Assembly (NCBI RefSeq): GCF_006345805.1
Contig: NC_043001.1
Location: forward strand, 115,506,001 to 115,570,000
Reading direction: 5' to 3'
DNA from: Octopus sinensis
Lineage: Eukaryota
Length of the DNA stretch: 64,000 bases
Below are positions 8,720 through 64,000 of the stretch, in pieces. The position numbers were made by a program, and so were the translations under genes. The notes under the pieces are model-generated. The model worked only from the letters and a program-made list of their open reading frames with translations, was not told the DNA's origin and did no database searches. Position 1 is the stretch's first letter. The number at the start of each line of letters is the position of its first letter.

Positions 8720-10085
8720 ATGTATAGATGACCATTATGTTATTTAGCTTGATGTGTCTCCTCAAGCACAACAAATCACCAGAAGTCTTGCTCCTTGTTA
8801 TCTTCTCAAAGAGAGTCTACCTCTGTAAATCATTTCTCACCAGCTTGTCCCTTGTCTTTCTGGCTTTTACCCCTTTATAGGTTCCTGCACAGACAGAGAT
8901 TAGAACTTCTTTATGCAGCTGTCCTCATCCATTACAGTGTAGCCTTCTCTCTTCCATACTATACTTCTCTCTTCAATACTCTTATACCCAGATTTTCTCA
9001 TAAATCAATTACACTCTCTCATATATGCACGCTAACATTACCCATTCGGTGGAATAGGCTGACTTCATTTCCTTCAAGCCTTTGCATGTCCTCTGTAGTC
9101 AGAACCCATATTTCAACAGCCATGTAGCATAGCTCTTTTTTACCAACAAAGGTAGCAGCTCTCTAGATATTGCCTAGTCTGTTCTTATTCTAACAACTAT
9201 GCCTTCAGAGCTTCCTCCTTCACTACTAACTTGGTTACCTAGGTAACAGAAACTATCTATTACTTCTACAGACCCTTCTAACATTTGAGAGAGTCTGTTT
9301 TCTGTACCTGCACATTTACCACACACAAAGACTACTTTCTCTGTTAATCTTCCTGTAATATTGCTGCACCTCTAGTGTGTCTGCTAGACCCGTAGGTGAA
9401 TAGGTGACTAGCAGGTTTCCTGAATTAATATTACAAATCATAAGATCATTGCATCACAGAATTTCAGCAGCCTGGTTCCCTCCATAGCACCACCATGCAC
9501 ACCATGGAAGTCCCCTGGATGTTGTCCAACATGCCCATTGAAGTCGCCAGCCACAAAGAGAAGGTCCTTGTCATTTGTTCAATATTGTAGTCTGTAAGAG
9601 GGTATCATAACATCGGTCTTTCTGTTCATCAGGTAGCCCAGCTGAGGGGCATAAGTCAAGATAATGGTTGCTAATCCTGTTGCGGTACTAATCTAAGCTT
9701 AAGTATTCTGTCATAGTCTCTGACTACCTTGATTACCTAATCAACCCATTTGTCCGCAAGAAGTATACCCACACCCCTGACCCCATCAGTGTTGTGTTCC
9801 CAGAAAATCTTATACCTTATACCTTCTTTGCCTTGCTGTGAGGAACCTAGCAGAACTTCCTCTCCAATCTTACTACTTGGATACAGCACAAATCTACACG
9901 TCTCCATTCAAGCATTTCAACAATCTCACCAGCCCTACCTTTTAATGTGCCAATATTAAGTGTACCAACTCTGAGGTTGTGGAAGGTATGGGCCTGCGAG
10001 ACCCTGGGGTGGGGGACAGCAGCATCATGTGCCTGAAAAGAAAGCTCGCATTTGACAGAACTATAAACATACAATAGACTCCTAC
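8720..10085 (-). mobile_element. RTE-type LINE fragments, including the 5' end and start of the APE endonuclease
   Basis: LRVGTLNIGTLKGRAGEIVEMLEWRRVDLCCIQ (9847-10095) is the APE N-terminal motif. C-terminal RTE fragments lie at 8720-9350. Confidence 0.75.
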
Positions 10086-10439
10086 CTGCAAACACTACAC
10101 CATCATTTTATGTCCTACATAATCACTACATTTCATAGGAGTTAAACACTAAGTAAAGATGGGGTAGCATTTAAGCCATTGGAGGTGTTTAGGGGAAAGA
10201 CATCCGATAGAGGTCAGAGGACAAAGACTTCCAGTATAGGTGGTGGGGTGGGATGGGCAGTCACAGCTTGAAACAGCAAACATTCTGGCTGCCGGTGTGA
10301 AAGAATAATAATAATGAAAACAATGATAATAAAAATAATACTAATAAAAATAATGAGATGGAATTGGACATTTGCATTCTTAACAAAAGCTATAACTAAC
10401 AGGTTTCAGTCAGTGAAACTGTGACGAAATTAAATGAAT

Positions 10440-15545: not shown

Positions 15546-16219
15546 ATTACATATTGTAACAGACAAATGAACAATAAAAATATGAAGCAAATGTTTACTG
15601 TTTGTGTGTGCTATATGGTGGGCAATACGTATATTTGCCCAGGCAGAAATATGTTGGCGCGTTGTAAGAGATGTGTGTCTATTGATTACTCGACCCACTA
15701 GAGGTCTAATAGAGGCAAGGTGTCTTTCAATGGCGAAAAAGATCGAGTGGTAGCATACATGAGAATATGACTTGTAAATGAGTGTGAACATACAGGTAGC
15801 AAAAAATATATTTACAAGAAAGCAAAACATTTTAAAGAGAAAACAAAACATATGTACATGCAAAAATTAAAGAAATGTTCATTGGCAAAGTTCGATTGTG
15901 AAATGTTCCGTAAATGTTCATACAGACAGTTTTTCGTTGATGTGGAACAACGTTTTTGTTTTCATTTTTTTTCCGTGATGTACACGAATGTTCTTTGATT
16001 TCTTTGGGTTTGTATGTGGGTGATGCAGTCATGTGAGTTATGTGTTGATGTATGCATTTCATTTAGGAAGATGGATAAGTTAAGAGTTCGGAACTTACCC
16101 GAAAAACTTGCACAAACCTTGCTGGCCATCGAACTGTTCTTCCCGATTTGGTGTGTCGGGTTGTGTAGAATCTGTGGTGTTTGCTGGAGTTGTTGAGTCT
16201 GTTTGAGGAAAGGAGGGAA

Positions 16220-19200: not shown

Positions 19201-19479
19201 GATGACGAATACCCACTGAAATGTGTGGCGTAGTCCTAAGTTCAATGTTAGGGACTGTTCACCGTAGGTTGGGATGGGTGAATGGTTGACTGCCTGAAGA
19301 CAGACTGGTGTCTCTTTTCTTTTTCCAGAAGTGTTGGAAACAGGGATGATGCTGACTTCTGCACCGGTGTCATCCAGGAAACACGTGCCTGTTACCCGAT
19401 CACAAACGAAAAACAGGGGACTGTGTGGGTGCGAGCCAGGAACTTCCGTCGCATTCAATTCCTGGCTGTGCCATTTCCC
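16220..19479 (-). pseudogene. pol: Gypsy pol (protease, RT, RNase H, integrase), interrupted by a SINE and in-frame stops
   Basis: [81 protein letters not shown]. Stops near 16924, 16900 and 16279 are all in frame. Confidence 0.92.
17717..17954 (-). mobile_element. tRNA-derived SINE inserted in the gypsy RNase H region
   Basis: Minus strand shows A box TGGCAGAAACG and B box GAGTTCAAATTCC. Flanked by a 13-bp TSD with one mismatch: gttgccatatacc (17704-17716) and gttcccatatacc (17955-17967). Confidence 0.9.
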
Positions 19480-20342
19480 GAACTTGATAAGGAAAATGAG
19501 CATGGTACCGTACATTTTTGTGCCCGTGTTCTGAATGTTCGGTGGTACCAACACATGTCATGTGAGTTGCGGGTAACACTGGGGCTTTGAGACCGTCTGC
19601 CATCTCGTCGCGATCGGCTGGTGCTTCGACGCTGGGGACTAAGCTTTAGGGCTTGTATTTGGGCTGTGAGGATTTGTATTTGTGCAGCTTGCTGCGTCAT
19701 TAATGCAAGCAAATCCGAAATCTCGGAAGAACTGGTTTGTGCACGGAAAGGATTGGTACTAGGAGCGGCTGGCGTCACCGTCGATACCATTGGATATTTG
19801 TGCGGTACTTCGGCTATTTTGTCAGCTAGCTCTGCCAGTTCTTCAATGGATGTATTTTCTCTAGTAGAAGCGAGAACAACCTGGGTATTGGAGGGCAGAC
19901 GCTGGAGAAAAAGCTGCTTGAAATTTTTTTCCGGGAGGCTCTCATCTCCGAGAAGCTGCTTCATTCTACGAAGAAGCTGGGACAGCGTTTTGTCACCCAA
20001 TTCTTCCGATATCAAAAGCTAGTGAAGTTGTTTCTGTTGCGATTCGGAGGTTCTGTTTATCAGAATGGTTTTAAAAGTGTCATACGACACAGAATTGGGT
20101 GGTGCCATGATAAGATCACGGACAAAGTTTGTGATTTCTGGTGACAGAAAACCGATAACATGCAAAAGTCGAGACGCATCGCTCAGTATTCGGTGAGAGG
20201 AAAACTGTGCCTCTATATGGTAAAACCGTAATGAAGGGTCGTGGGTCCAGAATGGTGGAATTTTCAAAGAAATCGCTGCTTGGAATGCCATGTCGATCGG
20301 AGGTATGATGTTGGCCGCTGGATTCTGTTCCGGGAGGGCCAT
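19455..20342 (-). pseudogene. gag: Gypsy gag with one in-frame premature stop (TAG at 20021-20019)
   Basis: LKIPPFW...IEAQF, EELGDKTLSQLLRRM, and the Cys-His motif CWYH...KC..PC. ORFs 20019-20342 and 19455-20015 are in the same frame. Confidence 0.88.
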
Positions 20343-21753
20343 TGTGTTCGTCGGAATTCTCAGGTGTTTCGTTGCCGGGTGATGTGCAAGCTGTATTTCT
20401 TCGACGCGGTTGATGAAGCTGTTTCCGGGGAAGGCGCAATTCTTTTGACGGGGTCACCAAATGTAGTGGATGTGTGTGTATGTAAATAAATACATAAATT
20501 GTTTCATGATTAAAAAGGGATTTATTTACAGGGTTATAAGTACACTACATACAAATATAAGCAAATGCTACGAATTGGTTGTATAGAACACATATTAAAA
20601 ATGAATATGTTTGTGTGTGTGAGTGTGTGCGTGAATCATTCGAAACAGTTGTCGATAGATACTGTAGGCATTTCTCTCTGTCTGCCAAAACGCGGGGCGA
20701 GATAAATCTGTCTGCTGCCATGACCGCTGCGATTGTGTGTCCCTTCTCTGTTTTCCCCATTGTATTTATAATATTTGTGACAGCTAGAAAAACAGACATA
20801 TCGCAATAGAGACAATACTTATTTAGGTCAGCACTTGTCCATTTGAACTTAGCCTGACATGGCTGAGGTCGCAGGTCGAAGGGAGATGATCAATCACTTT
20901 TTGACAGAACAAAGAGATCCTATTTTCGCGCCTTTAATTGCATTGCTTTGGACGAACGATGATTCTTGGATTCGATTTCGAATCTAGGCTTAGAGAAGGA
21001 AGTGCTAATTCTTACAGGTCCAACTGTTCACTGTTTGAGATGTATCTAGTCCTGGAATCTCAAATTTGTATTATTAATCTTAGTGTATCATTAATCTCAT
21101 TTTCAAAGTCAGTTTGGTTTGTCCAATGTAATCTTCACTGCATATATTACATTTGATGACATATGTTAAATTATTTGATGAGCAAATGAAGTTGTTTTCA
21201 CAATAAAACGATATGCTGATTTAAATTTATGTTATGTATCTTCAATAAGTTTAGTACAAGTTATGAATTTAGAACCACACTTTTCAGCTGTTTATAGGAA
21301 GTAGTTCTGAATTGGTATATAGTTTTTTGCCTTTTTAACGTTAAATGTCTTAGTGTTTCTTGTGGTCTGTGATGTAATAATTGTTATAAAAGGTAGAGTT
21401 TAGTGTGTATCTTCAATGTCTATTGCTTTGGCATGTTCTATTCAATTCCCTGTTATCTTAGACAGGTATTGTCTTTCAAGTACTGCCTGTTTTAATTGTT
21501 GGAGCGTTTTATACTGTACTTCAAGATTGGAAACAAGAGAGTGAAGTTCTAGCAAGGTTAAATGGTATATTTGGTTTGATATGTGTTGGTTGGCATAAGG
21601 TAACTTGTAGGTACTGTTTATATTCTGGGTAAATGCATCTCTTATGGCCACTCAGTGTATTTTCAACTTGTTTTATTTCCTTGATGCTCCTACATGTATA
21701 AATAAATAACACTCATATTTCTATATACACACAGATACTCACACACGCATATA

Positions 21754-34929: not shown

Positions 34930-35910
34930 TACATAAACAAACAAACTTTGCTTTTTATATTTATTGTTTACAATGGTCAGTGTAAAAACAAACTTTGTTT
35001 TTTTTTACAGTGAAATAGTATGTAGATTGCTAGAAATAGGAGCCAATACACCACCAAGTCACCCCCATCTATTTTCAGAAAATAAGTGTACAGTTATGTG
35101 CGGAATCATCATCATCATTTAATATCCATTGGCCGTGCTGGCATGGGTTGGATGGTTTGACTGGGCTGGTATGCTGGAAAGCTGCACCAGACTCCAGTCA
35201 GATTTGGCATCGTTTTCTACAGCTGGATGCCCTTCCTAATGCCAACCACTCTGAGTGTGTAATGGGTGCTTTTACATGCCACTGGCATGACACTGGGGTG
35301 TGTTTATGAGCCTCAGGCACAGGTGCCAATTAGTGTGACACTTGTATTTGTTGCAACTGATTTTGCTTGGCTTGATGGGTCTTCTTCTCAAGCACGACAT
35401 AATGCCAAAGGTCTTGGTCATTGCCTCCGTGAGCCCCAACACTTGAAAGGAACTCAGCCACTTTGATACACAAAACCAGAAATACTATCAATTTTATTTA
35501 GTATTTTCAGCATTCATGATAGTGAAATAGACTGTATGTGAATTGCTAGAAATAGTAGCCAGTACACCTCCTACTTGCCCCCTTTTCATTCTGTTTTCAG
35601 AAAATAAGTGCACAGTTATCTGCAGAATGGTTAGATTAATTCAAATGATGTAAAAATCCTGAAATGTTGCCAATTTTATTTAGTGTTTTCAGTGGTCAAC
35701 CTAGAAACAAACAAACTTTGCTTTTTATAAGGACATGTAGACATCATAGTGAAATGATACATGGATTGCCAATACACCACCAAGTTGACTCCCACTAATC
35801 CATTTTTAGAAAATAAGTGAACTGTTATGTGCAGAATGGTCAATAACAAGCAAAGTCTGAAATATTATCAATTTTATTGAGTATTTTCAGTGGTCAGTGT
35901 ACAAACAAAT
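34930..35910. repeat. Degenerate tandem array of three units of about 230 bp, the first interrupted by an RTE 3' end (35105-35465, minus)
   Basis: gtgaaat...ttttcagaaaataagtg.acagttat.tgc.gaat recurs near 35010, 35520 and 35750. Confidence 0.7.
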
Positions 35911-43874: not shown

Positions 43875-44665
43875 CAGTTATGGAGTGAATTTTTGGGCTT
43901 ATAAATCTAATATTTTCCTACCCTTCCTTAATACCATTTTGCATATGCTACTTATTGGATTAAGAACAGAACAAGGAGATAAGCCCTGCTTTCCCAGGAA
44001 TTACTGGGTACATCAGCTAATATATATATAGATAGATAAAACATAATAGCTTCCCCTGAACCATTTAGTTTCATTTTGGTTGACAAACAAATGAATTAAC
44101 TCTCTCTTATATATATAAATAAATTTTGCATTTTAAATGCCTTTGGTGAAAATTTTCAGGGTGCATAAAAGGACAATATGTGAACTACATAGCGATTTAC
44201 TGGAATATTCAAATATACACAGAAAATATATCTATGTTTACTATGTATATGTGTGTGTGCACGCATGCATTAAAAATATTCATTTATTTTAAAATTCAAT
44301 ATTACTAATAATAATAATCATGAATAATGATTTATACTTTGTAAGAGGAACATTATTTACTGAATAAAATGAAATAAAATTAAAGTGAAAGAGAAATAAA
44401 GTTTATGTTCATGTTTGTATATGTGTGTGTGCATGTCTATGCTCATATTTATATATACGCATGCACACACATGCACAGACGCACATACACAGGTACAGAT
44501 ATACATACACACAATAATTATGGATGCCAATGGTTTATATATCAACTTACATGTGTATATATGTTACTTTCTAAGTTTTTTATTAATGTACATAAATACA
44601 TAAGAGCAGCAATAAAAGTTCATTCACACATTATTTGATATTAATATTTATATTGAAGTTTAATA

Positions 44666-44973
44666 GGTAGGAGCACTCTGTCGGTTGCGACGATGAGGGT
44701 CCCAGCTGATACGATCAACGGAACAGCTTCCTCATGATATTAACGTGCAAGTGGCTGAGCACCCCACAGACACATGTACCCTTAACGTAGTTCTCGAGGA
44801 GATTCAGCGTGACACAGCGTGTGACAAGGCTGGCCCTTTGAAATACAGGTACAAGAGAAACAGGAAGAAAGAGTGAGGGTAAGTTGTGGTGAAAGAGTAC
44901 AGCAGGGTTCACCACCACCCGCTGCCGGAGCATCGTGGAGCTTTAGGTGTTTTCGCTCAATAAACACTCACAA
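44666..44973 (-). mobile_element. 5'-truncated SINE (3' half), part of a chimeric insertion
   Basis: Shares its 3' half with the complete SINE at 52240-52558 (acctgtatt..aaagggccagcc...gagtgctcc); the tRNA head is missing. Confidence 0.85.
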
Positions 44974-45226
44974 TGGGCTAAAAGACATGGACGACATCCA
45001 GAAACTTCATGAGAAAGTATTGACTGTCTTGAAACTTGAAGTCGGCAAGAATCACAAGGAGGAGGAGACAACTCTTGTGAAACTCCTTGGTCATGTAGAG
45101 GAGCTGCGCAACCTAGGAGGATGGCACATCGATGTGCTCAACATGTTCAAACGATCTGCTCCGGACATAGAGTTCCCTGCCCTTCACAAAGAACTTTTCT
45201 CAGTAGAAGGCATCGAAGGATCATGA
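44974..45226 (+). pseudogene. HR3: Captured fragment of an HR3/ROR (NR1F) nuclear receptor ligand-binding-domain C-terminus
   Basis: GLKDMDDIQKLHEKVL...KNH...LVKLLGHVEELRNL...H...FKRSAPDIEFPALHKELFSVE; FPALHKELFS is the HR3-type helix-12 region as I recall it. No splice acceptor upstream; lies inside a TSD. Confidence 0.75.
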
Positions 45227-45704
45227 AGTTTAATAATAATGATAATAATCAACTAAATTATGTAAAAGTAAAAGTACATGATTAAAATATATAATATAAT
45301 AAAATAAAATAAATAAGGTAGCAGAAATAATGAATATAGAATAAATAGGATAAGAATAAAAAATAGAAATAAAGGGGAAGTAAAATTTATTTATGCGTGA
45401 ATGCATGTCCGTGTATATGCATACATGGATTATATTATGTGTATGTGGATATCTATATATGGATAACATTGTTGGTATTTATAAAACATAATAAATAAAA
45501 TAAAATAAGGTAAATAAGTAAGCAGAAATAAGGAATAAAGAATAAATGAAAATATAAAGGTGAAATAAATTTGCTTATGTGTTTATACACGTGAATACAT
45601 GTATGGGTGTATCTTGTTTATATATTAGTATCTCTATATGTACTTGCATATACAGATGTAGAGATGTTTATTTCTAGTTATTTCATTAGTTCATTAGTTT
45701 ATAT

Positions 45705-46550
45705 TTCCACACCCTAGCGGTTGAGGGAACCTGTGGAAGCGGTAGACCCAGGAAGCACGACCTTCGAACTTTAGGCCTCACCAAGGAAATACACGAGATA
45801 TAGTATTCAAATTTAGGATGTTTTTGAAAGACACTATACTTTATAATGAGATTAAATATACTTACTGTGTAAAAACAAATTCAAGCGAGGTTGTTGCCAG
45901 TACCGAGACCTTTGGAAATATGCTGTGCGTGAGAAGACCCGGCAAGCCAAATGAGACCATAACCTGGTCTGCCTGTGCCAGGGGTGTAACCAGCCCACTT
46001 GTGCATACCTTTCCCTTCTCTGAACACTAATCTCTGCTTGCGAAGACCTGTTGAGGCAATTGAAATTGAAACCGAAATCAAAATCAAAGTGAAATTCGAT
46101 GACGGGCACGAGCACCATACGAGCGTGATTGTTGCCAGCTTCGCCTTACTGGCACTTATGTCCTGTGCTAGTAGGGTGCTAAGAGCACCATCTGAGCATG
46201 ATCGTTGCCAGAGTGGCTAACTGGCTTGTAGGAGGGATGTAGGAGGCACCATTCGAGCGGGATCGTTACCAGCATCGCCTTACTGGCACCTGTGCCGTTA
46301 GCATGTGTAAAAACAAATTCGAGTGAGGTCGTTGCCAGTACCGCCTGACTGGCCCGATGCTAGTGGCACGTAAAAGCACCCACTACACTCTCGGAGTGGT
46401 TGGTGTTAGGAAGGGCATCCAGCTGTAGAAACTCTGCTAGATCAAGACTGGAGCTTGGTGCAGCCATCTGGTTCACCAGCCGACAGTCAAACTGTCCAAC
46501 CCATGCTAGCATGGAAAGCAGACGTTACACAACAATGATGATGATGATGA
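45705..46550 (+). mobile_element. RTE 3' fragment (C-terminus, 3' UTR, GAT tail) with a templated insertion
   Basis: VEGTCGSGRPRK..HDLRTLGLTKE, LWKYAVREKTRQAK*, and a (GAT)n tail at about 46536-46551. Confidence 0.8.
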
Positions 46551-47519
46551 TGTATGGATAATATTGTTGGTATTTATCTGTATATATAAAAGGCAGGATG
46601 TGTGTACGTGAACGTAATTTATGCATGTCCACAAATTAGCACACATGTCGCTCCAATTTTAGGAGGACATTTGTCACGATCCTAACTGTATTTTTGTCAA
46701 ATTATTTTTCCCGAAGCACCAGCGGGTAGTAGTAAAAACCGATTTTCAACCTTAACTTTTACCAATTTTGAAGTTTGCTAACATGAGTTAAGTCCCTTCT
46801 TGCCATAAGGAAGTGAAAATGTGTGTGTGTGTGTGAGGGAGAGAGAAGTTGTGTGTGAGGGAGACAGATGTTGTGTGTTGTTGTGTGTGTGTGTGTGTGA
46901 GGGAGAGATAAAGTAAGTGACAGTGTTCACCAAAAATAAAAATGTAAAATGTTTTTTTTTCTTATACACGAGATATAGTATTCAAATTTAGGATGTTTTT
47001 GAAAGACACTATACTTTATAATCAGATTATATATACTTTCTCACACAACAATGAAAATATATTTATTTTAAATCCTGAAACACATGTCCCTAGATGCAGC
47101 CCGGGCGGCTGGGAGTATTTGTCTCCCCTTCGTAAATGTATATAAGGACACAGGAAAAATGTGTCAAAGCCATCAGGAGGCGTCGATGCTTCTTAGGGCT
47201 AAACAGCGGTGGTGTACCCCCCTACTGTCACGTTCGTGTTAGATTGACAGTATACAACCATTCTATCGCCCCACCACCGTACATGTCTCTACGAGAGATT
47301 TAGAAATTTAGTATTCCTATTTTAAATCATTTATTTATTTTAAATCGTTCATCTTTCTCCCTGCCCCCTCTCTCTCACACACAAACACATTACTTTGGAC
47401 AAGAAAGAGTTTGTTTTTATTTTACATTGAGGAAGAATGTGTTTTGTTGAGAATCTATGTATTTAACAACATAGAAACATTAAGTTTCTGAAAAGACTTA
47501 CATTTAATGTTTCTGCAAA

Positions 47520-49763
47520 GAAAGAGGCTTGGAGAAGCCATTATGAAAGACTGCTGAATGTAGAGAATGAATGGGAGGAGAAGAGCCTGCCAAATGTTAA
47601 TCCAGTTGAAGGACCAGCTATCCCAATAGAGAGCTCCCTAGTAGATAAAGCAATTAAGGGTATAAAGCCAGGAAAATCCCCCGGCCTATCAGGAATCACC
47701 ACTGAGATGCTTAAAACACCTGGTGGAGTGGGATATGGCCTAGTCACATGCATTGTAAACCAGGTAGTTCATAATGGAGTCATACCCAATGACTGGCGTA
47801 GCAGCACCATAGTCAACTGCTACAAGGGTAAAGGTGATGCTCTAGATAGAAATAACTACAGACGTATCAAACTGCTGGATCAGGTGATGACTGTCACTGA
47901 GAGGGTCATAGCCCATCTCATTAGGGAGAGAGTCTGCTTAGATGAGATGCAGTTCGGTTTTGTTCTGGGTAGAAGCACCACTGATGCCATATTCCTGGTT
48001 TGACAACTGCAGGATAAATACCTAGCTAAAGATAAACCCCTGTACTTAGCTTTTGTGGACTTGGAGAAAGCCTTTGACAGGGTTCCTCGATCCCTTATCT
48101 GGTGGGCAATGTGGAAATTGGAGATTGACGAATGGTTAATAAGGGCTGTACAGGCCCTATACCAAGAGGCCGTTAGTAAGGTTAGGATTAGCAACGAGTA
48201 TCATAAAGAATTCCGGGTAGAAGTAGGGATCCACCAAGGTTCAGCCCTCAGTCCCTTTTATTCATCATAGTCCTCTAAGCAATAACAGAGGAATTCAAGA
48301 CAGGTTGCCCCTGGGAGCTCCTCTATGCTGATGACCTGGCCCTCATAGCAGAATCACTACCGGAACTAGAAAAGAAATTTCGGCTGTGGAAGCAAGGTTT
48401 AGAATCAAAAGGCCTTAGAGTCAATGTAGCAAAGACCAAAGTTCTAGTAAGTAGGAAGGCGAACTCATCACCCCCCCCGCCTCAATCTGTAGAAAAGGCG
48501 TAGGTAGAAACTCCATAAGATGTACCCAGTGTAAGCTATGGATGCATAAGAGGTGCTGCAACATCAGAGGAAAATTAACCGAGAAGATAGCTTTTGTGTG
48601 CAGCAGATGCACAGGGGCAATAGACACCACAGATACTCAGAAAACAGATTCCATCACACTCCGGGGAGAGAAACTAGAAGTAGTTGATAGTTTCCACTAC
48701 CTAGGTGACCGAGTTAGTAGTGGAGGTGGATTCTCATAGAGTGTCACCACTAGAATACAAATAGCCTGGGCAAAGTTCAGAAAGCTTCTACCCCTACTAG
48801 TGACAAAGGGTCTCTCGCACAGAGTGAATGGTAGATTGTACGACGCATGTGTGTGAACTACAATGCTTCACGGTAGTGAAACATAGGCTGTGACTGCAGA
48901 GGACATGCATAGGCTTGAAAGAAATGAAGCTAGCATGATCCGCTGGATGTGTAATGTTAGTGTGCACACATGACAGAGTGTAAGCCCTGAGAGAAATACT
49001 GGACATAAGAAGCATTGGATGTGGCGTGCAAAAGAGACATTTGCACTGGTATGGTCATGTACTATGGATGGATGAGGAGAGATGAGTGAAGAAGTGCCAC
49101 TCCCAAACAGTTGAAGGAATCCAGGGTAGAAGTAGACCCAGGAATACATGGGATGAGGTGGTCAAGCATGACCTTTGAACATTGGGCCTCACAGAGACAA
49201 TGATGAAAGACCGAGATCTCTGGAGATATGCTGTGACTGCGAAGACCTGACAGATAACGTGAGTTCATGGCTGTTTCCTGCACCAGCTTCACATAGCAGC
49301 CCCAACCCATCCAAAGTACCTTCGACTGCAGGACGGCCTGCTGTGCTTACCTTGGATTGTAGGGTGACCTGCTGTGCTTAAGGAGACCTACTGAGTCAAA
49401 TACATCAACATCAAAATAAAAATCAAATGGAAATTGTAGTTGTGATACCTCTGCTGGTGTCACGTAAAAAGCACCATCCGAACGTGGCCGATGCCAGCGC
49501 CGTCTTGACTGGCTTCCTTGCCGGTGGCACATAAAAAGCACCAGCCGATCGTGGCCATTGCCAGCCTCACCTGGTCTCTGTGCCGGTGGCACATAAAAAG
49601 GACCCACTACACTCACGGAGTTGTTGGCGTTAGGAAGGGCATCTAGCTGTAGAAACACTGCCAGATCAGACTGGAGCCTGGTACAGCCTCCTGGATTCTC
49701 AGACCCCAGTCGAACTGTCCAACCCATGCTAGCATGGAAAACGGACGTTGAACGATGATGATG

Positions 49764-50418: not shown

Positions 50419-51634
50419 ATGGGTGGGGCAGCGTTAAACACATTCGGTTTGCCATCCTCATTGCGACAGGGTGTTAACACACTCCCACCAAAGTTACATC
50501 TGGACTTGTCATATGACGCTGATGGCCTTGCAGAGTACCTGAGAGTAAATGAACCGAAATTGCTGCCTGATCAGAGGCTAGTGTACGAAACTGTCGTCAG
50601 TGCCATTAAAAAACAGGTGGGTGGCATTTTTTTCCTCAATGCTACTAGAGGTACCAGCAAATCCTTTGTAACACAATTAATACTTGATAATATTCATTGC
50701 AAGAAACAAATTGCACTAGCAGTTGCTTCCTTGGGAATCGCTGCTACGTTATTGCCAGGAGGTAGGACGGTGCACTCAGCATTCAGGCTGCCTTTACATT
50801 TGGTGAGGGCTGAGGTTCCTACTTGCAAGATTGGCAAAATTTCAGAGGAAAATGAAGTTCTTAGTGCCATCTCATTGTATGGGACGAATGCACAATGACC
50901 AGTAAGGTTGCCCTTGAGGCACTGGACCGGTCACTGAAAGGTATTAGGGATTCTACAGCTTCTATGAGTGGTGTAACTCTATTGCTTTCAGGAGATTTCT
51001 GGCAAACACTTCCTGTCATCCCTAAAGGGAGCCAGGCTGATGAAGCGCGTGCATGCCTTAAGTCATCGACGTTGTGGCTCCAGGTTAAGACCTTAAGTCT
51101 AAGCGCAAACATGTGTGCACACTTGCTTGGTGATAGCACATCTGCAGCATTTGCTGAAGTCATTTTAACCCTTGGAGAAGGCAAGGTCCCTAGGAATTAT
51201 AGGGGTGACATATCCATCTCTGAACTGTGCAACACTGTGGACAACCCTTCCAATCTTTCGGAAACAGTGTTCCCCAATCTGGAGGGGAACACTCCAACAT
51301 GGCTTCCACTCACATTCTTAGGCTAAGGGTTGGATACCCAATTATGCTAATTAGAAACTTGCTTCCGCCTAAACAGTGCAATGGGACCTGCTTAGTAATC
51401 AAGTCTCTGACGCCCCACTTGACTGAGGCCACCATTGTTACAGGGTGCGGGAGGGGTGAAAATATTTCCATTTCAAGGATGCAGCTTTATCCCTCAGGGT
51501 CAGACATGCCATTTAACCTCCACAGATCACAGTTCCCAGTGAGATCATGCTTCACCATGTCCATCAACAAATCCCAAGGCCAAACACTATTGGTGGCAGG
51601 CATCCATTTGAGGTTTTCCATTCAATCAGGATAA
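50419..51634 (+). pseudogene. Helitron PIF1-like helicase fragment (frameshifted)
   Basis: FFLNATRGTSKSF (degenerate Walker A), GIAATLLPGGRTVHSAF, LLSGDFWQTLPV, IMLIRNL..CNGT, QFPVRSCFTMSINKSQGQT. Confidence 0.92.
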
Positions 51635-52239
51635 AAATTGATGAACCAATTCCTTATAGGATTTCCTACTAATATTGGCTACACCCCATTTTCAACCATA
51701 ACTTTCACATATTTTGACATATTTTCCCCAAACTTGATGCCAGCATTACTTAGGACCCATGGAATCTTTGAATGCTGTAAGTTCTCAAATAAAAAAAATA
51801 AACAATTGCTGAATGGAAATAATTGATAAACCAATTCCTTATGGGATTTCATAATCAAATTGCCTGCAACCCATTTTCAGCCAAAAGTATACCAATTTCA
51901 ATGGATTTCACTCAAATTTGATGTCGGTGTCACTTATTTTGGTTTGAAATAAAGCGTTTGATCACTTTATAATCCTAACTTAATTCCGAGCAACACCGGG
52001 CTATACTGCAAGTAAAATATATAATGAAATAACATAAAGAAGTAAGCAGAAATAATGAATGAATTAATTAATTATAAATAAAAATAACCACATAAGCAAA
52101 TTTATTTCACCTTTATATTTTTATTTATTCTTTACTCCTTATTTCTGCTTACTTATTTCATTTTATTTATTATGTTGTATAAATACCAACAATATTATCC
52201 ATGTATACATATACACATAATATAATCCATCTATGCATA

Positions 52240-52558
52240 GTAAAGGCACATGGCTTAGTGGTTAGGGCATTCAGCTCATGATCAAAAGATCATAAGTTCA
52301 ATTCCTGGTGACGCATTTTGTCCTTGAGCAAGACACTTTATTTCACATTGCTCCAGTTCACTCAGCTGGCAAAAATAAGTAGCACCTGTATTTTAAAGGG
52401 CCAGCCACGTCATGCTGAATCTCCCTGAGAACTACGTTAAGGGTACACATGTCTGTGGAGTGCTCAGCCACTTGCACATTAATTTCATGAGCAAGCTGTC
52501 CTGTCGATCATATCAGCTAGGACCTTTGTCATCATAACCAATGGAGTGCTCCTCAATG
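52240..52558 (+). mobile_element. Complete tRNA-derived SINE
   Basis: A box TGGCTTAGTGG, B box AAGTTCAATTCC. 17-bp TSD with one mismatch: taatccatctatgcata (52223-52239) and taatccatgtatgcata (52559-52575). Confidence 0.9.
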
Positions 52559-52697
52559 TAATCCATGTATGCATATACACACACAGATGTATACTTGTGC
52601 ATGAATTCCCACATAAACTTTCCCTTTATTTCTAATTTTTATTCTTATCTTATTTATTCTATATTCATTATTTCTGCTGCCTTATCTAATTTTATTA

Positions 52698-54317
52698 CCA
52701 GCTGAAATACCTACTGTTGCCCAGGTTTAAGAAAATAATGAAATTTAAAAATACCTTTTAGATCTCAAACATGAAACATAGACTACACTGGTCTTACCTC
52801 CTAGTAGCTGAGATACCAACTTTATACATTAACAGCCTGCCGTTTCCCAGGTTATTGGAAATAATGAAATTTAAATATGCCTTTTAAATCTCTAACTAAA
52901 GTGAAACCTGGATTATGCAGTTCTCAACAGTAATTAGCTGAGGTACAAACTATTAATGTCAATGACATGTTTTATCCAATGTTTTCACTGTTAGAACTGT
53001 TAAAGACCAGGTAGTTCTTTGTCTTTGCAATCACCTTCAATTATCAGTACTTATTTGAAATGCATTGAACCTGAAAGTGCATAAATTTGAGAAGAACCAG
53101 TCTGCAGGCACTCTCCTCCTGTTAATAAGTACATTTAATAAAAATTCTATGTGATGATGTGAGTATAAACAAATGTATTGAAACAAATCCAGCAATCAGT
53201 CACAGTTTAATTATCTAGAGCTTCTAAATGATGTTTAGAGTGTGTCCTGTAATTGGTGTATAAATGAAAAGATTTTGGGGACTTCCAACCTGCGAACATC
53301 CTACATATAATTGCCCATGCGAGAAGCAAGGTGAAGTTCAACAAGAGAGGCTGTCCTTATTTATTAACATAGTGAAACTTAGTTTCACTGGGAGCTGGAA
53401 CCATTCAAAGGGGATGTCATGTGGGATTAACAGGATCTGTGGAATGAAGACATCCTCACCCTTATAGTTCCTAGTCATAATTATTGCTTCCGGGACATGG
53501 AATCACATCACTTTCACCACCAGTCAGGTGCCATTGCACAGTCGAGGTGATTCCAGATTCCTGAGCAGCATGATTGGGGCCTCCTTTTTAAGTGTTAAGT
53601 GATGAGGTAGCATCTCAGATGGCTGTAGAGCATTCAAGAACTTAGTTTGAAAGACTGTTATTGTCCAGGCAACAGCTACAAGAGATCCCAGTCGATTTTG
53701 TTAATAGCATCATTACATGGTACTAAGATGGCTCGCTCACAGAGCCATTGACTGTTGCTAAAGTTTTGTGCAGTGTTTGGGAGCACATGCATTATGAGAT
53801 CATTGACAGTTGGTACCATCTCACCACAGGCTTTCTGCCCCTCCCCACCAACTTTGGATGATGATAACTTTCAGAAAAATGGATAGTTTTTAATGAAATT
53901 TTTTAATGAATATGTGTTATATCACGTAGATTCCCAACATACAAATTTTGGGGGAAAAGTATTTTGGCAGGGGTTGGAGGAGGACTTTCGGAAAATTCAC
54001 CGGAATCCACTTGAATTTGTCTTAACTTTCAGAAAATGGATATTTTTTAATACAAATATACCTTGAAGTATGTAGATTCCATCCATATAGGATTTGGGAG
54101 GAAAACAATTGGAGATTATTTTTGTGAACTATTCCCCACTGGGGGATGTTTCAGAACAAGTTATCCATATTTGTTTCTGTTTCTCCGTTTTGTGCGTTTG
54201 TGCACCTGTATATAACCCTTAACCCTAGTTGTAAAATTTCAAGAAAAAAATTGAAAAGTTAAGGAGTGGATGAATTAAAAAGTCTAAAAGTAGATTTTTT
54301 GCATATTCTCTTACACA

Positions 54318-54388
<71 letters not shown>

Positions 54389-54509
54389 ACACACTCACAT
54401 AAGTATATATCTTACACAAATAGAAAGCCAGAGAAGAAAATATAAAATGTAAGTGAATTTAGAATTTGTTTTTTATCTGAAATCGTCACAACTGTAATGA
54501 TGTATGCAT

Positions 54510-54565
<56 letters not shown>

Positions 54566-55121
54566 AGCTGTTTACTTAGTTACTATGTTGACATTGACAA
54601 TACAATTAAGTGGAAGTGTTAATAAGTTGATTTGCATCAAGAATAATCACATGGGATTTAAATGTGAAATATCAAGTCTTAATAAAGCCACTTGTTCCCA
54701 AAATGGCCAAAATATGTTTTGGAAAATTAATGTACAGTATATAGTACCTCATTTAATTAAGTTAAAAAATGGTGTCTATCTCCGTATGAAATTATTTTTC
54801 TGACATGAAAGTACCTTTAGAAATTCTTTTTGTCAGAATCATCACAACTGTAATGATGTATACATACATGTGTGTGTAGATATCTAGTTAGGACATCAAA
54901 GACAGGAAGTTCAAGCACAGGAAGTTGAGAAAACGATTTGAACAAGTGAATCTTTTCTATAGAGCAATATTATTCATTTAAAAAAATTAAAAATAAATCA
55001 AGGTTGCATTATTCTTTCCAAGGTCAAATTATTCATGTACCCCAAGTATGGTACAAATTGATTCAGAACTTTGAGAATGCATTGAGGACACACACAGATA
55101 GGGTATTTTTTTTTATTAAGA
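52698..55121 (-). mobile_element. Second Helitron, convergent with the first
   Basis: Minus strand: 5' A|TC at 55122/55121; 3' CCTGGGCAACAGTAGG...CAGCTGG|T at 52698. Helicase remnants LKKEAPIMLLRNL..RLCNGT and GEDVFIP...FSHGQLYVGCS at about 53830-53200. Confidence 0.78.
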
Positions 55122-55479
55122 TATTATATATTTTAATCATCTGCTTTTACTCTTATATAATTTAATTGATTATTATCATTATTATTAAATTTAAATATAA
55201 ATATGAATATTAAACAAGAGCACAAATCTCCACCAAGGCAACACTAACGTCCTCTCAATGATTAACTGGAGAGGATTTTTAAAATGAGAATATCTGAAAT
55301 AAACTCAACTGCTCTCACAAACGAAAATACTAAAAATGAACCTGACTTCTCTCAAAAATTAAGTAAAAAACATGGAAAATTAATCCAGAATCCTTATCCA
55401 CTACCTGATCAATCCCAATGGTAGTCATGGAATGTGACGGTGGGTGTGTGGGGCCATATTTGTAATGTTGCATTCGTGT

Positions 55480-55700
55480 CGTCTGCATTGGGAACAGGAA
55501 CAGTTTTCTCTAGGAAAGCCTTTTTTAGTCTATCCATTAATATAGTGTCTTAATGACCATTAAGGTCTATAGTGAAAAATTTATCCATGCGTGAAAGAAA
55601 ACGGAAAGGACCTGCATACGGTCCTGTTAACGTAGATTTAACAACATCGTTGCGCACAAAAATGTGAGTTCAAGAAGTAACGCTTCCTTCAAGGCAGGGC
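55480..55700 (-). mobile_element. Gypsy integrase C-terminal fragment
   Basis: THIFVRNDVVKSTLTGPYAGPF...FFTIDLNGH*DTILMDRLKKAF; homologous to, but distinct from, the integrase end at 16220-16400. Confidence 0.75.
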
Positions 55701-56169
55701 TAGAAATGCAATTGTCAAGTAGGTAAGAGGTTTTGAATAGGAGCTATATATTCAAAATTGTTAAAACTAAAAATTATCAAGGATAAATTAAATTTATTAT
55801 TGTTACTAAATATTTTAGTGTTATTTAATTTCTGAGCAGTTTTGCTGCCATTTGTTTATGTAGTTTGATTTCTTTGTCCATCAGTTTCTACTAAGATAGA
55901 GATGCGAGTAAAATTAATATTAGAGAAACAAAATAAAACTTTGGAAGCAACAACACTGTCATAACTCATGTGGAAACCATGAGTGTGCTTTCAAGGGAGA
56001 TAATCAGAGAAAGACTTAAAATTCAGCATAAGATCATAATACTTAAGTAAATATAACAAATAATCTAGAATCCTTGTCCAGTACCAAATTGATCCCAAAA
56101 TCTAATCAGTTTATGCCAGTCATGAGGCCGAACATCCATGAAGGTTTCATCTGAATCCATCTGGTTGTT

Positions 56170-57932
56170 CTTGAGATATCTTGTCCACCAGCTTTAATTT
56201 TAGCTTCACTCATGCTAGAAACAAATTTTTCACTGAGATATTTGAATCCTTCACTGTCTACATTCATGGCCGTAACAAAATTCTTAAATAAGCCAAATTT
56301 AATGTGTAAGGGATGAAGGAAAATTTTCTGAAGGTCAACTAAAGGGATATATTTAATGTTGTATCTCCCTGGAGTGAATTCACTTCACTTTGGCCACTGT
56401 TTTTGATTATAGTGATGCTTGTCATCTCTGCTGTTCTAAAGGCACAAAAAGCACTAATGCTTTACATACCCCATTTGCAACCCAAGAAGCAAACCAATAA
56501 CTTTCAAGTCCCTGCATATATTCCACTTGTGTTTAGAATATTTAATCAAGTGCAAAATTTTTTCCATTGATTCATACATCTCCTTTAATCTTACATGCAA
56601 TTCTGTACGCCGTTTTGAAAGTACGAATATTTTATAACATGGTGTAAAAGATTCCATTGTTTCAACCTGGAGCCCAGTAGTTCTGACTTTTCTTTTGTTA
56701 AACCCAAGTCTCGAACTAAATCATTTAACTCAAGTTGACTCAATAAATACGGAACTTTTTTCGAAGATCCTGGTTCATCACAGTGATCTGCAGTATCACT
56801 TGACATGCCTTCAATTGAAGTAGATGCAGTATTTTCTTCATTTAAACTATTTTTCTCAAAAGATGAAGGAGGTTCTGGAATTGGAATATTTTCAGCAGCA
56901 TGAGAAACTGGTCTTAAAGCTGAAGAGCAATCTGGATAAACAAATCTTGGATTTGTTCTTCTTAGAGAAACCTGTGATATTAGTTAAGCAGAAATAACAA
57001 TTGGTATAGTGGTTTGTTGGTTTGCGCATACTTTTCCGTTTATCTTTCAACCATTGGGTTAGAGCTATGTTGCAGCTTTTGCAACAAAGAGGAGGTGCCC
57101 ACAGTTTATCTTGGTCCCCAACTTTGGACCCAAAGTAAAGCTTGTAAGCATTTTAAAATTTCGTTGTAAGCTTATTTCTCTGATCTTTTGATGTAAATTT
57201 TCCACACACGTAACAAAAGCTGTCCACATGATTAGCACAAACTTGTCTCCTCATCATAAATATATACAGAAATAACCTAAATCAACACTCAATGAAGACT
57301 ATCAGTAAACTAAGATATAAAATTAATCAAATGTAAATGTTACTGTAAAGCATCAAAATATATTTCTCAAAAAAATCATTGAAATTATTATAGAATGTAC
57401 TGAAGCTATGGCTATCACGAAACAATTTTTTCCATCTCTAAATTTTAAGCATTGATCACTTTAATAAATAACTAAACTTTCTACTAAACAGCTTTTCATG
57501 TAACCTGGCTCTCTTATTTGATATACTTTGTTTTAACAGCACTAGCAGTTATCAAGGAAAGGTGTCTGAGTGGCTTTCTATAACCTAATATCGATAGCCT
57601 TCTGTGAGGAGAACTTTACTATAATTACAGCAATAACAAAGTAAAATAAATTCTCATCTTGTGTGACAATTTAACAGGTAGCCTACATTTAACCTCTATC
57701 AGCACTTGTTTTTGTTTCCGTGATGAGTATATGAATGAAAATTGAAAGCAAATAGCCTACTACTTTGTCAATATTATCAATTGGTTGGAAAATCTGATGC
57801 TGTGAATAACTAAAAAAGCTACACTTGCTGTCTAAAAACTGATGTCAGATTCAGATTCAGTACCTTAAAATTACCCTAAATCATCTGAAAAAGTTTAAAT
57901 AGCATGACAATTTTCTTTTTTTTTGCCCAATG
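56170..57932 (-). mobile_element. Degenerate DDE-type DNA transposon, tentatively CMC/Chapaev-3-like
   Basis: CANHVDSFCYVCG...YFGSKVGDQDKLWAPPLCCKSC, SQLELNDLVRDLGL..SELLGSRL, KWNICRDLKVIGLLLGLQ, PLHIKFGLFKNFV. Putative terminus CATTGGGCAAAAAA at 57932. Superfamily name is from memory. Confidence 0.7.
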
Positions 57933-57997
57933 ATATTGTTATTAGAAATATTAAATTTCCAAATCTCTCATAGAGATATGTATGGTGGTGGGGCGAT

Positions 57998-58272
57998 AGA
58001 ATGGTTGTATACTGTCAATCTAACGTGAACGTGACAGTAGGGGGTTACACCACCGCTGTTTAGCCCTAGGAAGCATTGATGCTTCCTGATGGCTTCGACA
58101 CATTTTTCCTGTGTCCTTATATACATTTGTCTCCCCTTCGTAAATGTATATAAGGACACAGGAAAAATGTGTCGAAGCCATCAGAAAGCGTCGATGCTTC
58201 CTAGGGCTAAACAGCGGTGGTGTAACCCCCTACTGTCACGTTCATGTTAGATTGACAGTATACAACCATTCT
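57998..58272. repeat. Foldback palindrome: 131-bp arms with a 13-nt spacer
   Basis: Arms 57998-58128 and 58142-58272 differ at 4 positions by my count; spacer gtctccccttcgt. Confidence 0.95.
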
Positions 58273-63033: not shown

Positions 63034-64000
63034 TGTCTGTTTTGGCATGGCTTTACAGCTGGATGCCTTTCCAAACACCAACCACCTTACAAAGTGGACA
63101 CTGCATTTTGCAGGACACCAGCACCAGCAAGGTCTGTTTTGGCATGGTTTTTACAGCTGGATGCTCTTCCTAACACCAACCACCTTACAAAGTGGACAGT
63201 GCATTTTGCAGGACACCAGCACCAGCAAGGTCTGTTTTGGCATGGTTTTTACAGCTGGATGCTCTTCCTAACACCAACCACCTTACAAAGTGGACAGTGC
63301 ATTTGCAGGACACCAGCACCAGCAAGGTCTGTTTTGGCATGGTTTTTACAGCTGGATGCTCTTCCTAACACCAACCACCTTACAAAGTGGACAGTGCATT
63401 TTGCAGGACACCAGCACCAGCAAGGTCTGTTTTGGCATGACTTTTACAGCTGGATGCTCTTCCTAACACCAACCACCTTACAAAGTGGACAGTGCATTTT
63501 GCGGGACACCAGCACCAGCAAGGTCTGTTTTGGCATGGTTTTACAGCTGGATGCTCTTCCTAACACCAACCACCTTACAAAGTGGACAGTGCATTTTGCA
63601 GGACACCAGCACCAGCAAGGTCTGTTTTGGCATGGTTTTTACAGCTGGATGCTCTTCCTAAACCAACCACCTTACAAGTGGAACAGTGGCATTTTGCAGG
63701 ACACCAGCACCAGCAAGGTCTGTTTTGGCATGGTTTTACAGCTGGATGCTCTTCCTAACACCAACCACCTTACAAAGTGGACAGTGCATTTTGCAGGACA
63801 CCAGCACCAGCAAGGTCTGTTTTGGCATGGTTTTACAGCTGGATGCTCTTCCTAACACCAACCACCTTACAAAGTGGACAGTGCATTTTGCAGGGACACC
63901 AGCACCAGCAAGGTCTGTTTTGGCATGACTTTTACAGCTGGATGCTCTTCCTAACAACAACCACCTTACAAAGTGGACCAGTGCATTTTGCGGGACAACC
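63034..64000. repeat. 97-98 bp tandem satellite (about 10 units, runs off the window), derived from the RTE 3' UTR
   Basis: gcaaggtc starts at 63127, 63225, 63322, 63420, 63518, 63615, 63713, 63810 and 63908. Preceded by the RTE tail end at 62935-63035. Confidence 0.95.

What the first reader, a model, noticed from the sequence alone, without database searches (positions are those of the whole stretch)
44654..45235. Twin-primed chimeric retro-insertion: SINE 3' half fused head-to-head with an HR3/ROR nuclear-receptor coding fragment
Seen: an exact 12-bp direct repeat TGAAGTTTAATA (44654-44665 and 45224-45235) brackets a minus-strand SINE 3' half (44666-44973) joined to a stop-free plus-strand NR LBD fragment (44974-45226). 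The fragment's TGA stop is the first three bases of the right TSD. The inverted paralogous segment carries one copy of the site (tattaaatttaa, 55183-55194), i.e. the empty state. Known: twin priming produces TSD-flanked inverted retrocopies for L1. Inference: the plus-strand target end primed on the SINE 3' end, and the minus-strand end (...CTTCA-3') primed on UGA(AG) at the HR3 stop codon. One or two RNAs were thus captured by LINE (probably RTE) machinery. This would imply germline HR3 RNA, and a 3' UTR or intronic SINE if only one RNA was used.
Basis: partly seen in the sequence, partly recalled or inferred. Interest (0 to 1): 0.85.

Follow-up and report, generated by a model that had tools for sequence, protein, structure and literature searches.

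The report
Inverted SINE-tail plus HR3-exon retro-insertion
An octopus-type genome carries a 558-base insertion, flanked by a 12-base duplication, that joins the tail of a mobile element head-to-head with a copy of the last coding exon of the HR3/ROR nuclear-receptor gene; it is a tidy single example of an already described side-product of LINE retrotransposition, not a new kind of system.

Summary
TGAAGTTTAATA occurs exactly twice (44654-65, 45224-35). It brackets a GC-rich 558-bp block (44666-45223) that is absent from an inverted paralogous segment, which has one copy of the site (55183-94).

The block has three parts:
- 44666-44850 (minus strand): the 3' tail of a tRNA-derived SINE, with no A-tail.
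- 44851-44974: 124 nt that match nothing available. The "SINE 3' half" is therefore only 60% verified.
- 44975-45226 (plus strand): an open copy of the NR1F (HR3/ROR) ligand-binding domain, helices 9-12, with its stop codon.

In the closest relative available, the true terminal exon starts 8 nt further upstream, behind a normal acceptor, and ends GIEGS-TGA-AGT. The window copy lacks that acceptor, the DRP codons and every other HR3 exon. It is a stray fragment, not the gene. It lies within one exon, so intron loss cannot be scored.

The geometry fits twin priming exactly, with 3-6 nt of microhomology at the stop codon. A template switch onto an antisense RNA would give the same structure. One versus two RNAs, the partner LINE clade ("RTE") and the parent gene could not be tested, because no octopus genome search was available. 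Antisense mRNA/LINE-1 chimeras attributed to twin priming are already catalogued in mammals, so this is a new member of a known kind. Interest is moderate to low.

The parts
44654..44665 (.). Left target-site duplication, TGAAGTTTAATA. Its 3' end is the plus-strand primer for the first cDNA.
   Evidence: aligned to the paralog site
44666..44850 (-). 3' tail (185 nt) of a SINE/LINE family. It ends ...AGAGTGCTCCTACC directly at the TSD, with no poly(A) or microsatellite.
   Evidence: 80% identity to 52384-52553 of the full-length SINE
44851..44974 (-). Unassigned 124 nt, contiguous with the tail. It does not match the tRNA head or core body of the reference SINE or anything else in the window. 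Candidates: 3' region of the partner LINE, body of another SINE subfamily, or HR3 3' UTR.
   Evidence: no match; alignment to the L001 3' UTR is not above shuffles; no Rfam match
44975..45226 (+). Open copy of the NR1F (HR3/ROR) terminal-exon coding sequence: 83 codons (LBD helices 9-12 with the AF-2 motif FPALHKELF) plus the TGA stop. The first 8 nt of the exon and the acceptor are missing.
45224..45235 (.). Right target-site duplication. TGAAGT (45224-45229) is also homologous to the relative's stop codon + 3 nt, giving 3-6 nt of microhomology.
55104..55217 (-). Paralogous unfilled site. Continuous homology to 44631-44665 + 45236-45311, with a single copy of the target (TTAAATTTAATA, 55183-55194).
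52240..52554 (+). Reference full-length SINE: tRNA-like head, core-like body and the same tail. It is flanked by a ~21-bp TSD (52219-52239 / 52555-52575). The window segment has the single unfilled copy at 45416-45436, so it is a reciprocal insertion in the other paralog.

Best explanation
A LINE-encoded endonuclease/reverse transcriptase made one staggered break, 12 bp apart, in an AT-rich repeat of an octopod genome.

Steps of the proposed mechanism:
- The plus-strand end (...TTTAATA-3') primed reverse transcription at the 3' terminus of a SINE- or LINE-tail RNA. It copied about 308 nt (44666-44973, antisense on the plus strand).
- The opposite, minus-strand end (...AAACTTCA-3') annealed by 3-6 nt to UGA(AGU) at the stop codon of HR3 mRNA. 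It copied about 250 nt towards the 5' end of that RNA and stopped 8 nt short of the start of the terminal exon.
- The two cDNA ends were joined at 44974/44975 and the gaps were filled. The product is TSD, antisense tail, sense HR3 fragment, TSD. This is twin priming.
- The product is a dead, promoterless and acceptorless gene fragment.

Shown: a single-event composite insertion with a TSD and an empty site; the identity and orientation of the tail and of the HR3 piece; the absence of the rest of the gene; the microhomology in the nearest relative.

Inferred: that the second primer, rather than a template switch, produced the HR3 piece; that HR3 sense mRNA was the template; and whether one RNA (HR3 mRNA with a tail element in its 3' UTR) or two RNAs were used. 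I lean to two RNAs, with 44666-44973 being a 5'-truncated LINE or SINE copy.
For: - Exact 12-bp TSD.
- Joined flanks align 100/114 across the junction to the paralog.
- GC is 0.49 in the insertion against 0.20-0.26 in the flanks.
- The tail is 80% identical to a full SINE that itself shows a TSD and an empty site in the other paralog, so the family was active after the duplication. Neither copy has an A-tail.
- The HR3 piece is 81% aa / 76.7% nt identical to a genuine multi-exon NR1F gene in L001. Homology starts 8 nt inside that exon and ends at TGA+AGT.
- A transcript from that lineage crosses ...SALILIRT|DRPGLKD, and the intron position is shared by four other relatives.
- tblastn with four full-length NR1F proteins finds no other exon in 64 kb. 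In L001 four LBD exons lie within 9.7 kb upstream.
- dN/dS is 0.09 with dS 1.55, so the sequence evolved as a working gene until recently.
- Both RNA 3' sides face outwards to the TSDs, as twin priming requires (derived).
- Antisense orientation is the published hallmark of twin-primed chimeras.
Against: - The parent HR3 gene of this species could not be reached, so the microhomology (only TGA is certain) and the age of the copy are inferred from a distant relative (dS 1.55).
- The fragment lies inside one exon, so there is no intron-loss proof of an RNA intermediate.
- Its inner end falls 8 nt from the exon start, an unexplained near-coincidence.
- 124 nt of the 'tail' side are unidentified.
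- The partner LINE and its endonuclease preference are unknown.
- The structure rests on a single assembly.
- A template switch onto an antisense RNA predicts the same final structure.
Confidence: 0.6

Rival explanations
1. Template switching plus microhomology-mediated 5' joining. A single first-strand cDNA, primed on the tail RNA, jumped after about 308 nt onto an antisense transcript of the HR3 3' end (or another antisense template). It copied that as far as the complement of the stop codon, and its 3' end was then captured by the other target end through the TGAAGT microhomology.
For: It yields exactly the observed order, orientation, TSD and microhomology. Template switching and microhomology at LINE 5' junctions are established (one search lists PMC4245944). 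Octopus transcriptomes are reported to be rich in SINE-containing lncRNAs and overlapping coding/non-coding pairs.
Against: It needs a hypothetical antisense HR3 RNA, whereas sense HR3 mRNA must exist. The published survey finds that template-switch chimeras are in the same orientation as the LINE and assigns antisense ones to twin priming.
Confidence: 0.17
2. Classical single-RNA twin priming. An HR3 mRNA whose 3' UTR carries this tail element in sense was the only template, and 44851-44974 is the start of the HR3 3' UTR.
For: In textbook twin priming the inner end of the direct segment lies next to the internal priming site in the RNA. The unassigned 124 nt are exactly where such UTR sequence would be. 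The best, though non-significant, local alignment of this stretch to L001 falls at its stop codon.
Against: The alignment score equals the shuffle mean (11 versus 10.9 +/- 1.7). L001 has no such tail within 10 kb downstream, though it is a distant species. It would require reverse transcription to start on a tail inside or at the end of an mRNA.
Confidence: 0.15
3. It is the genuine terminal exon of an HR3 gene, and the 12-bp repeat is a coincidence.
For: The reading frame is intact, dN/dS is 0.09 against a relative, and the AF-2 motif is conserved. Cephalopod introns can be long, so upstream exons might lie outside the window.
Against: The conserved acceptor and the DRP codons are missing and replaced by repeat-associated sequence. 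Sequence right after the stop is the paralogous AT-rich repeat, not a UTR. The whole block is absent from the paralog, with base-exact TSD edges. No other NR exon lies in 44.9 kb upstream.
Confidence: 0.03
4. Artefact or DNA-level event: an assembly chimera, or capture of stray cDNA/DNA fragments as filler during double-strand-break repair without LINE involvement.
For: Only one assembly was seen and no reads were available. Filler-DNA insertions can combine unrelated pieces.
Against: An exact 12-bp TSD, a tail terminus precisely at the TSD and a sister SINE with its own TSD are signatures of target-primed reverse transcription, not of mis-assembly or blunt end joining.
Confidence: 0.05

Closest known systems
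Antisense-oriented mRNA/LINE-1, tRNA/LINE-1 and 5S/LINE-1 chimeric insertions attributed to twin priming (Cell Genomics 2026, PMC13174262)
   Same: A single TSD-flanked insertion. The LINE-type 3' segment is joined head-to-head with a fragment of an unrelated cellular RNA in the opposite orientation. The mRNA part has no first exon and no splice features.
   Different: Those are mammalian L1 events with poly(A) tails and the TT/AAAA site. Here the host is an octopod, the tail has no A-run (a tail-recognising LINE/SINE system of unknown clade), and the captured piece is coding sequence ending at the stop codon.
Classical L1 twin priming / 5'-inverted L1 insertions (Ostertag and Kazazian 2001; cited)
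   Same: Two cDNAs are primed from the two ends of one staggered break. The second primer anneals internally by microhomology. The product is an inverted segment plus a direct segment inside one TSD.
   Different: The classical case uses one RNA, and the two breakpoints are adjacent in that RNA. Here the two halves are unrelated as far as can be shown, and adjacency is untestable.
Template-switch chimeric retrogenes (U6/L1, U3/L1, 28S/L1, mRNA/L1 in sense)
   Same: A bipartite retro-insertion with one TSD, with the LINE-type 3' part at one end.
   Different: Those parts are in the same orientation. The head-to-head orientation here does not fit unless the second template was an antisense RNA.
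Processed pseudogene (retrocopy) of a host mRNA
   Same: A stray, promoterless copy of coding sequence with a TSD, recently derived from a constrained gene (dN/dS 0.09).
   Different: There is no poly(A), no 3' UTR and no 5' part. Only 252 nt of one exon are present, and they are attached to a repeat tail in inverse orientation.
tRNA-derived, LINE-tailed SINEs of molluscs and cephalopods
   Same: The last 185 nt match a SINE with a tRNA-like head and core-like body in the same window. Both copies have TSDs and no A-tail.
   Different: The inserted copy has no head or core. Its upstream 124 nt differ from that SINE.

Membership tests
Twin-primed (inverted) LINE-mediated chimeric insertion | One target-site duplication flanks the whole composite, and an unfilled site exists | tested here: met
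   12/12 TSD. The paralog has one copy, and the joined flanks align 100/114 across the junction.
Twin-primed (inverted) LINE-mediated chimeric insertion | Two segments in opposite orientation, each with its RNA-3' side facing a TSD | tested here: met
   The tail 3' terminus is at 44666 next to the left TSD. The HR3 stop codon is at 45224-26, inside the right TSD.
Twin-primed (inverted) LINE-mediated chimeric insertion | Complementarity between the second target 3' end and the internal priming site | tested here: inconclusive
   TGA is certain. TGAAGT (6 nt) holds only if the parent resembles L001. The same-species parent was not available.
Twin-primed (inverted) LINE-mediated chimeric insertion | Classical form only: both segments come from one RNA, with adjacent breakpoints | not testable with these tools
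   The parent 3' UTR is needed. Comparison with the L001 UTR is not above shuffles.
Twin-primed (inverted) LINE-mediated chimeric insertion | First-strand nick at the LINE endonuclease's preferred site | not testable with these tools
   The partner LINE is unknown. The two nick sites in the window are TTTAATA^ATAATG and GATTATATT^ATGTGT, both AT-rich. With n=2 no consensus can be drawn.
   No LINE with this tail is in the window. The TSDs are 12 bp and about 21 bp. The 5' TSD starts with T in one case and A in the other, and neither has a clear T-run at -10.
tRNA-derived SINE (for 44666-44973) | tRNA-like head with A and B boxes, body, and LINE-like tail | tested here: not met
   Only the tail (185 nt) is present. 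The head and core of the reference copy (weak tRNA hit of 17 bits) are absent, and the upstream 124 nt do not match. It is a 5'-truncated SINE of another subfamily, or a LINE 3' end.
Functional NR1F (HR3/ROR) gene | LBD C-terminus with the AF-2 helix | tested here: met
   ROR-alpha/beta are the best PDB matches (E 1.7e-8). FPALHKELF is invariant in the alignment.
Functional NR1F (HR3/ROR) gene | Splice acceptor and complete terminal exon; DBD and other LBD exons upstream on the same strand | tested here: not met
   The acceptor and the first 8 nt (DRP) are absent. tblastn finds only this piece in 64 kb.
Processed pseudogene | Intron loss, poly(A) tail, TSD | tested here: inconclusive
   A TSD is present and there is no poly(A). 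The fragment lies within one exon, so intron loss cannot be scored.

The most novel reading that the evidence does not exclude
A tail-recognising, non-L1 LINE/SINE system of octopods carries out twin priming on host mRNAs. Alternatively, it mobilises any mRNA that happens to carry a SINE tail in its 3' UTR. Either way it would scatter open coding-exon fragments through a SINE-rich cephalopod genome. That would be a so far undescribed route for exon dispersal and shuffling outside mammals, and this locus would be its first documented footprint.
Probability: 0.3. Interest if true: 0.5.

Novelty: new member of a known kind. Interest (0 to 1): 0.33.

Why it matters
If the reading is right, the double-priming side reaction known from mammalian L1 also happens with the poly(A)-less SINE/LINE machinery of a cephalopod, and it can drop an intact piece of a developmental transcription-factor gene into a repeat desert.

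- The locus is a ready-made search pattern for a genome-wide screen: repeat tail in one orientation, exon fragment in the other, one TSD. Such a screen could measure how often octopus retroelements capture host coding sequence.
- For genome annotation, it is a warning. An open, well-conserved 83-codon HR3 LBD fragment here is a stray copy and should not be stitched into an HR3 gene model.
- On its own it is a single neutral insertion with no sign of function.

Tried and rejected
- Looked for the parent gene and for independent copies of this locus. The protein word search gave only three short relatives, none from this species. Exact look-ups of the 79-aa and 117-aa window ORFs found nothing. 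Scans of metagenome, viral and prokaryote genome collections for the HR3 piece or for SINE-tail 18-20-mers gave nothing, or only chance 18-mer hits.
- Tried to identify 44851-44974. It has no other copy in the window even at word size 7. A protein search with its longest ORF found nothing. There is no Rfam hit, and no copy in 21.8 kb of Octopus sinensis.
- Tested the idea that the 124 nt are HR3 3' UTR by aligning them to the L001 UTR. The score equals the shuffle mean, so the idea is unsupported but not excluded.
- Pfam on the 83-aa fragment alone gave no Hormone_recep hit because it is too short. Identity was established through PDB and full-length relatives instead.
- Rejected sequential independent insertions: neither piece has its own TSD.
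- Rejected Helitron or DNA-transposon gene capture: there are no terminal inverted repeats and no Helitron ends, and a 12-bp TSD abuts a retroelement terminus.
- Rejected 5' transduction or read-through from a colinear source. The source would need the repeat 8 nt inside the exon, which only moves the problem one step back.
- Checked the RTE insertion signature from PMC6007223. With two sites it is uninformative.
- A 3' stem-loop in the tail is predicted but rests on two sequences, so it was not used.

Full report
**Observation.** The sequence is as described. TGAAGTTTAATA occurs at 44654-44665 and 45224-45235 and nowhere else in the 64 kb, even with one mismatch.
- Between the two copies lies a 558-bp block (44666-45223) of 49% GC, in flanks of 20-26% GC.
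- Frame 2 of 44975-45226 is open and reads GLKDMDDIQKLHEKVLTVLKLEVGKNHKEEETTLVKLLGHVEELRNLGGWHIDVLNMFKRSAPDIEFPALHKELFSVEGIEGS*. The TGA is the first three bases of the right repeat.
- A 12-bp repeat is not remarkable in itself. About 40 non-trivial exact direct repeats of 12 bp or more, 300-1000 bp apart, exist in the window.
- What matters is that its inner edges coincide to the base with every other boundary described below.

**Empty site.** The region belongs to an inverted, diverged duplicate.
- The colinear matches are 44108-44338 to 58484-58257, 44631-44665 to 55217-55183, 45226-45311 to 55192-55104, 45303-45436 to 52696-52555, and 45404-45586 to 52252-52084. Identities are 82-89%.
- The left-flank and right-flank matches overlap on one copy of the site in the paralog (TTAAATTTAATA, 55183-55194).
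- When the two flanks are joined with a single repeat copy, they align without a gap across the junction, 100 of 114 identical, to 55217-55104.
- The 558 bp are therefore an insertion with a 12-bp target-site duplication (TSD).
- The paralog carries its own later insertion. This is a full-length SINE at 52240-52554 with a ~21-bp TSD (52219-39 and 52555-75), for which the window segment holds the single unfilled copy at 45416-45436. So both copies collected retro-insertions after the duplication.

**The repeat half.**
- On the minus strand, 44850 to 44666 is 80% identical to the last ~170 nt of that full-length SINE. It ends ...AGAGTGCTCCTACC directly against the TSD.
- Neither copy has a poly(A) or microsatellite tail.
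- The reference SINE has a tRNA-like head, with boxes TGGCTTAGTGG and GTTCAATTCC, that gives a weak tRNA hit of 17 bits, below threshold. Its body resembles CORE-SINE cores; that resemblance is from my own knowledge and was not tested.
- The inserted copy has neither head nor body. Its upstream 124 nt (44851-44974) match nothing in the window, nothing in Rfam, nothing in 21.8 kb of Octopus sinensis, and gave no protein hits.
- 'SINE 3' half' is therefore verified for 185 of 308 nt. The remainder may be the 3' region of the partner LINE (SINE tails are borrowed from LINEs), a different SINE body, or HR3 3' UTR.

**The coding half.**
- The 83 residues match ROR-alpha and ROR-beta ligand-binding domains best among solved structures (E 1.7e-8, residues ~175-252, i.e. 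helices 9-12). PPAR-gamma follows at 2.6e-4.
- An exhaustive HMMER search finds full-length relatives with zf-C4 plus Hormone_recep domains. One is named 'probable nuclear hormone receptor HR3' by NCBI (Lingula, 53% identity).
- The best relative, L001, is a 163-kb ENA contig of unknown species with 81% aa and 76.7% nt identity. It is a bona fide gene. Colinear LBD exons lie at 311-436, 5512-5652, ~8334-8549, 8962-9090 and 9980-10237.
- Its terminal exon begins behind a polypyrimidine tract and AG (...ttttttttaaattgaactag|ATCGACCCGGACTCAAAGAC). It ends GGATCA TGA AGTGAAAAC.
- A transcript-derived protein of that lineage crosses the junction as ...SALILIRT|DRPGLKD. Genomic ORFs of four other relatives break at the same place.
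- Window homology runs from 8 nt inside this exon (44975 = L001 9989) to three bases past the stop (45229 = L001 10243) and no further.

**Not the gene.**
- The window copy lacks the acceptor and the conserved DRP codons.
- What follows its stop is the paralogous AT-rich repeat.
- tblastn with four full-length NR1F proteins finds no other exon in the whole window.
- Against L001, dN/dS is 0.09 with dS 1.55. So almost all divergence accrued under constraint, as expected for a recent copy of the species' own HR3 gene.
- A few unique replacements at otherwise conserved positions (NKFK to NMFK, R/Q to W) are compatible with relaxed constraint.

**Host.** The window's degraded Ty3/Gypsy pol ORF is 89% identical to an Octopus sinensis protein. 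O. sinensis DNA shares many repeat families with the window at 65-91%. The window is therefore from an octopod. Published annotation of O. vulgaris reports 11.6% SINEs and several active LINE clades (RTE, Dong-R4, CR1, L1-Tx1).

**Mechanism.** The geometry follows from the sequence.
- The antisense tail begins immediately after the left TSD on the plus strand. So the plus-strand nick lay 3' of ...TTTAATA, and that end primed cDNA on the tail RNA.
- A second nick 12 bp to the left on the minus strand leaves the end ...TATTAAACTTCA-3'. This is complementary to UGAAGU at and after the HR3 stop codon: 3 nt are certain, and 6 nt hold if the parent resembles L001.
- Extension from that end on sense HR3 mRNA gives exactly the observed minus-strand reading ...ACTTCA|TGATCCTTCGATGCC....
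- The two cDNA 3' ends meet at 44974/44975.
- This is twin priming, and I give it 0.6.
- I cannot tell whether one RNA or two were used. The classical one-RNA form predicts that 44974-44851 (reverse complement) is the start of the HR3 3' UTR. Alignment to the L001 UTR is no better than shuffles (score 11 versus 10.9 +/- 1.7), but UTRs would not be alignable at dS 1.55.
- The main rival gives the same product: a template switch of a single cDNA onto an antisense HR3 transcript, followed by microhomology-mediated 5' joining (0.17).
- The fragment lies within one exon, so there is no intron-loss proof of an RNA intermediate. The retro origin rests on the TSD and the tail terminus.
- Its inner end, 8 nt from the exon start, is an unexplained near-coincidence.

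**Comparison with what is known.**
- Twin priming was proposed for 5'-inverted L1 copies.
- A 2026 survey of mammalian genomes lists TSD-flanked chimeras in which tRNA, 5S and mRNA fragments lie antisense to L1. It attributes them to twin priming, while sense chimeras are attributed to template switching or RNA ligation (PMC13174262).
- The present locus has the same architecture in an octopod, with a poly(A)-less tail element.
- 'RTE' is not established. No LINE with this tail is available. The TSDs are 12 and ~21 bp, against the 7-15 bp cited for RTE. The T/T-run signature of RTE-related SINEs is not evident at two sites.

**Verdict.** It is a neutral, single-event chimeric retro-insertion, a new member of a known kind. 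Its value is mainly as a search pattern for a genome-wide screen and as an annotation warning. Interest is 0.33.

Noticed in passing
window 52219-52575 and 45416-45436: A full-length tRNA-headed SINE (52240-52554, + strand) sits in the paralogous segment with a ~21-bp TSD (AATATAATCCATCTATGCATA / AATGTAATCCATGTATGCATA). The focal segment keeps the single unfilled copy. It is the reciprocal of the focal insertion and shows long TSDs and no A-tail for this family.
   Followed up: yes
window 44108-45586 versus 58484-52084: An inverted, 82-89% identical duplicate of an AT-rich segment. The distal copy is interrupted by two extra blocks (55218-58256, about 3.0 kb; 52697-55103, about 2.4 kb) of unknown nature. 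It is unclear whether this is a segmental inverted duplication or two copies of a dispersed repeat.
   Followed up: partly
window 15568-20603 (minus strand): A degraded Ty3/Gypsy-type LTR retrotransposon. Protease/RT (17923-19554), RNase H plus integrase zinc finger (16922-17734) and integrase core (16277-16870) are split into separate ORFs. It is 89-90% identical in DNA to a copy on Octopus sinensis CM016864.1 (L038), which identifies the host as an octopod.
   Followed up: partly
window 50419-51634 (+ strand): PIF1-like helicase and Pif1 2B domain spread over three overlapping frames. This is probably a decayed Helitron helicase, lying between the two arms of the inverted duplicate.
   Followed up: no
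window 63035-63997: A 98-bp satellite with 9.9 copies at 96% match that runs to the end of the window. Each monomer contains about 37 nt that match (inverted, ~95%) an interspersed repeat at 46396-46432. That repeat family has at least six other copies in the window (e.g. 445-616, 10490-10657, 35147-35288, 49471-49723). The satellite may derive from a mobile-element fragment.
   Followed up: no
window 47117-47319 versus 57943-58272: A 92-96% identical short element that matches 57943-58272 in both orientations, so the latter is a near-palindrome. It may be a MITE-like or hairpin element sitting at the edge of the paralog's 3-kb extra block.
   Followed up: no
window 11938-12456: A 257-bp unit repeated twice in tandem (88% match), of unknown origin.
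   Followed up: no
L001 1-10240 (ENA ERZ21867824 ctg115959l): A 'metagenome' contig that carries a complete multi-exon NR1F/HR3 ligand-binding region of an animal (five colinear exons). It is evidently host DNA, probably from a cephalopod or other mollusc, in a metagenome assembly.
   Followed up: partly
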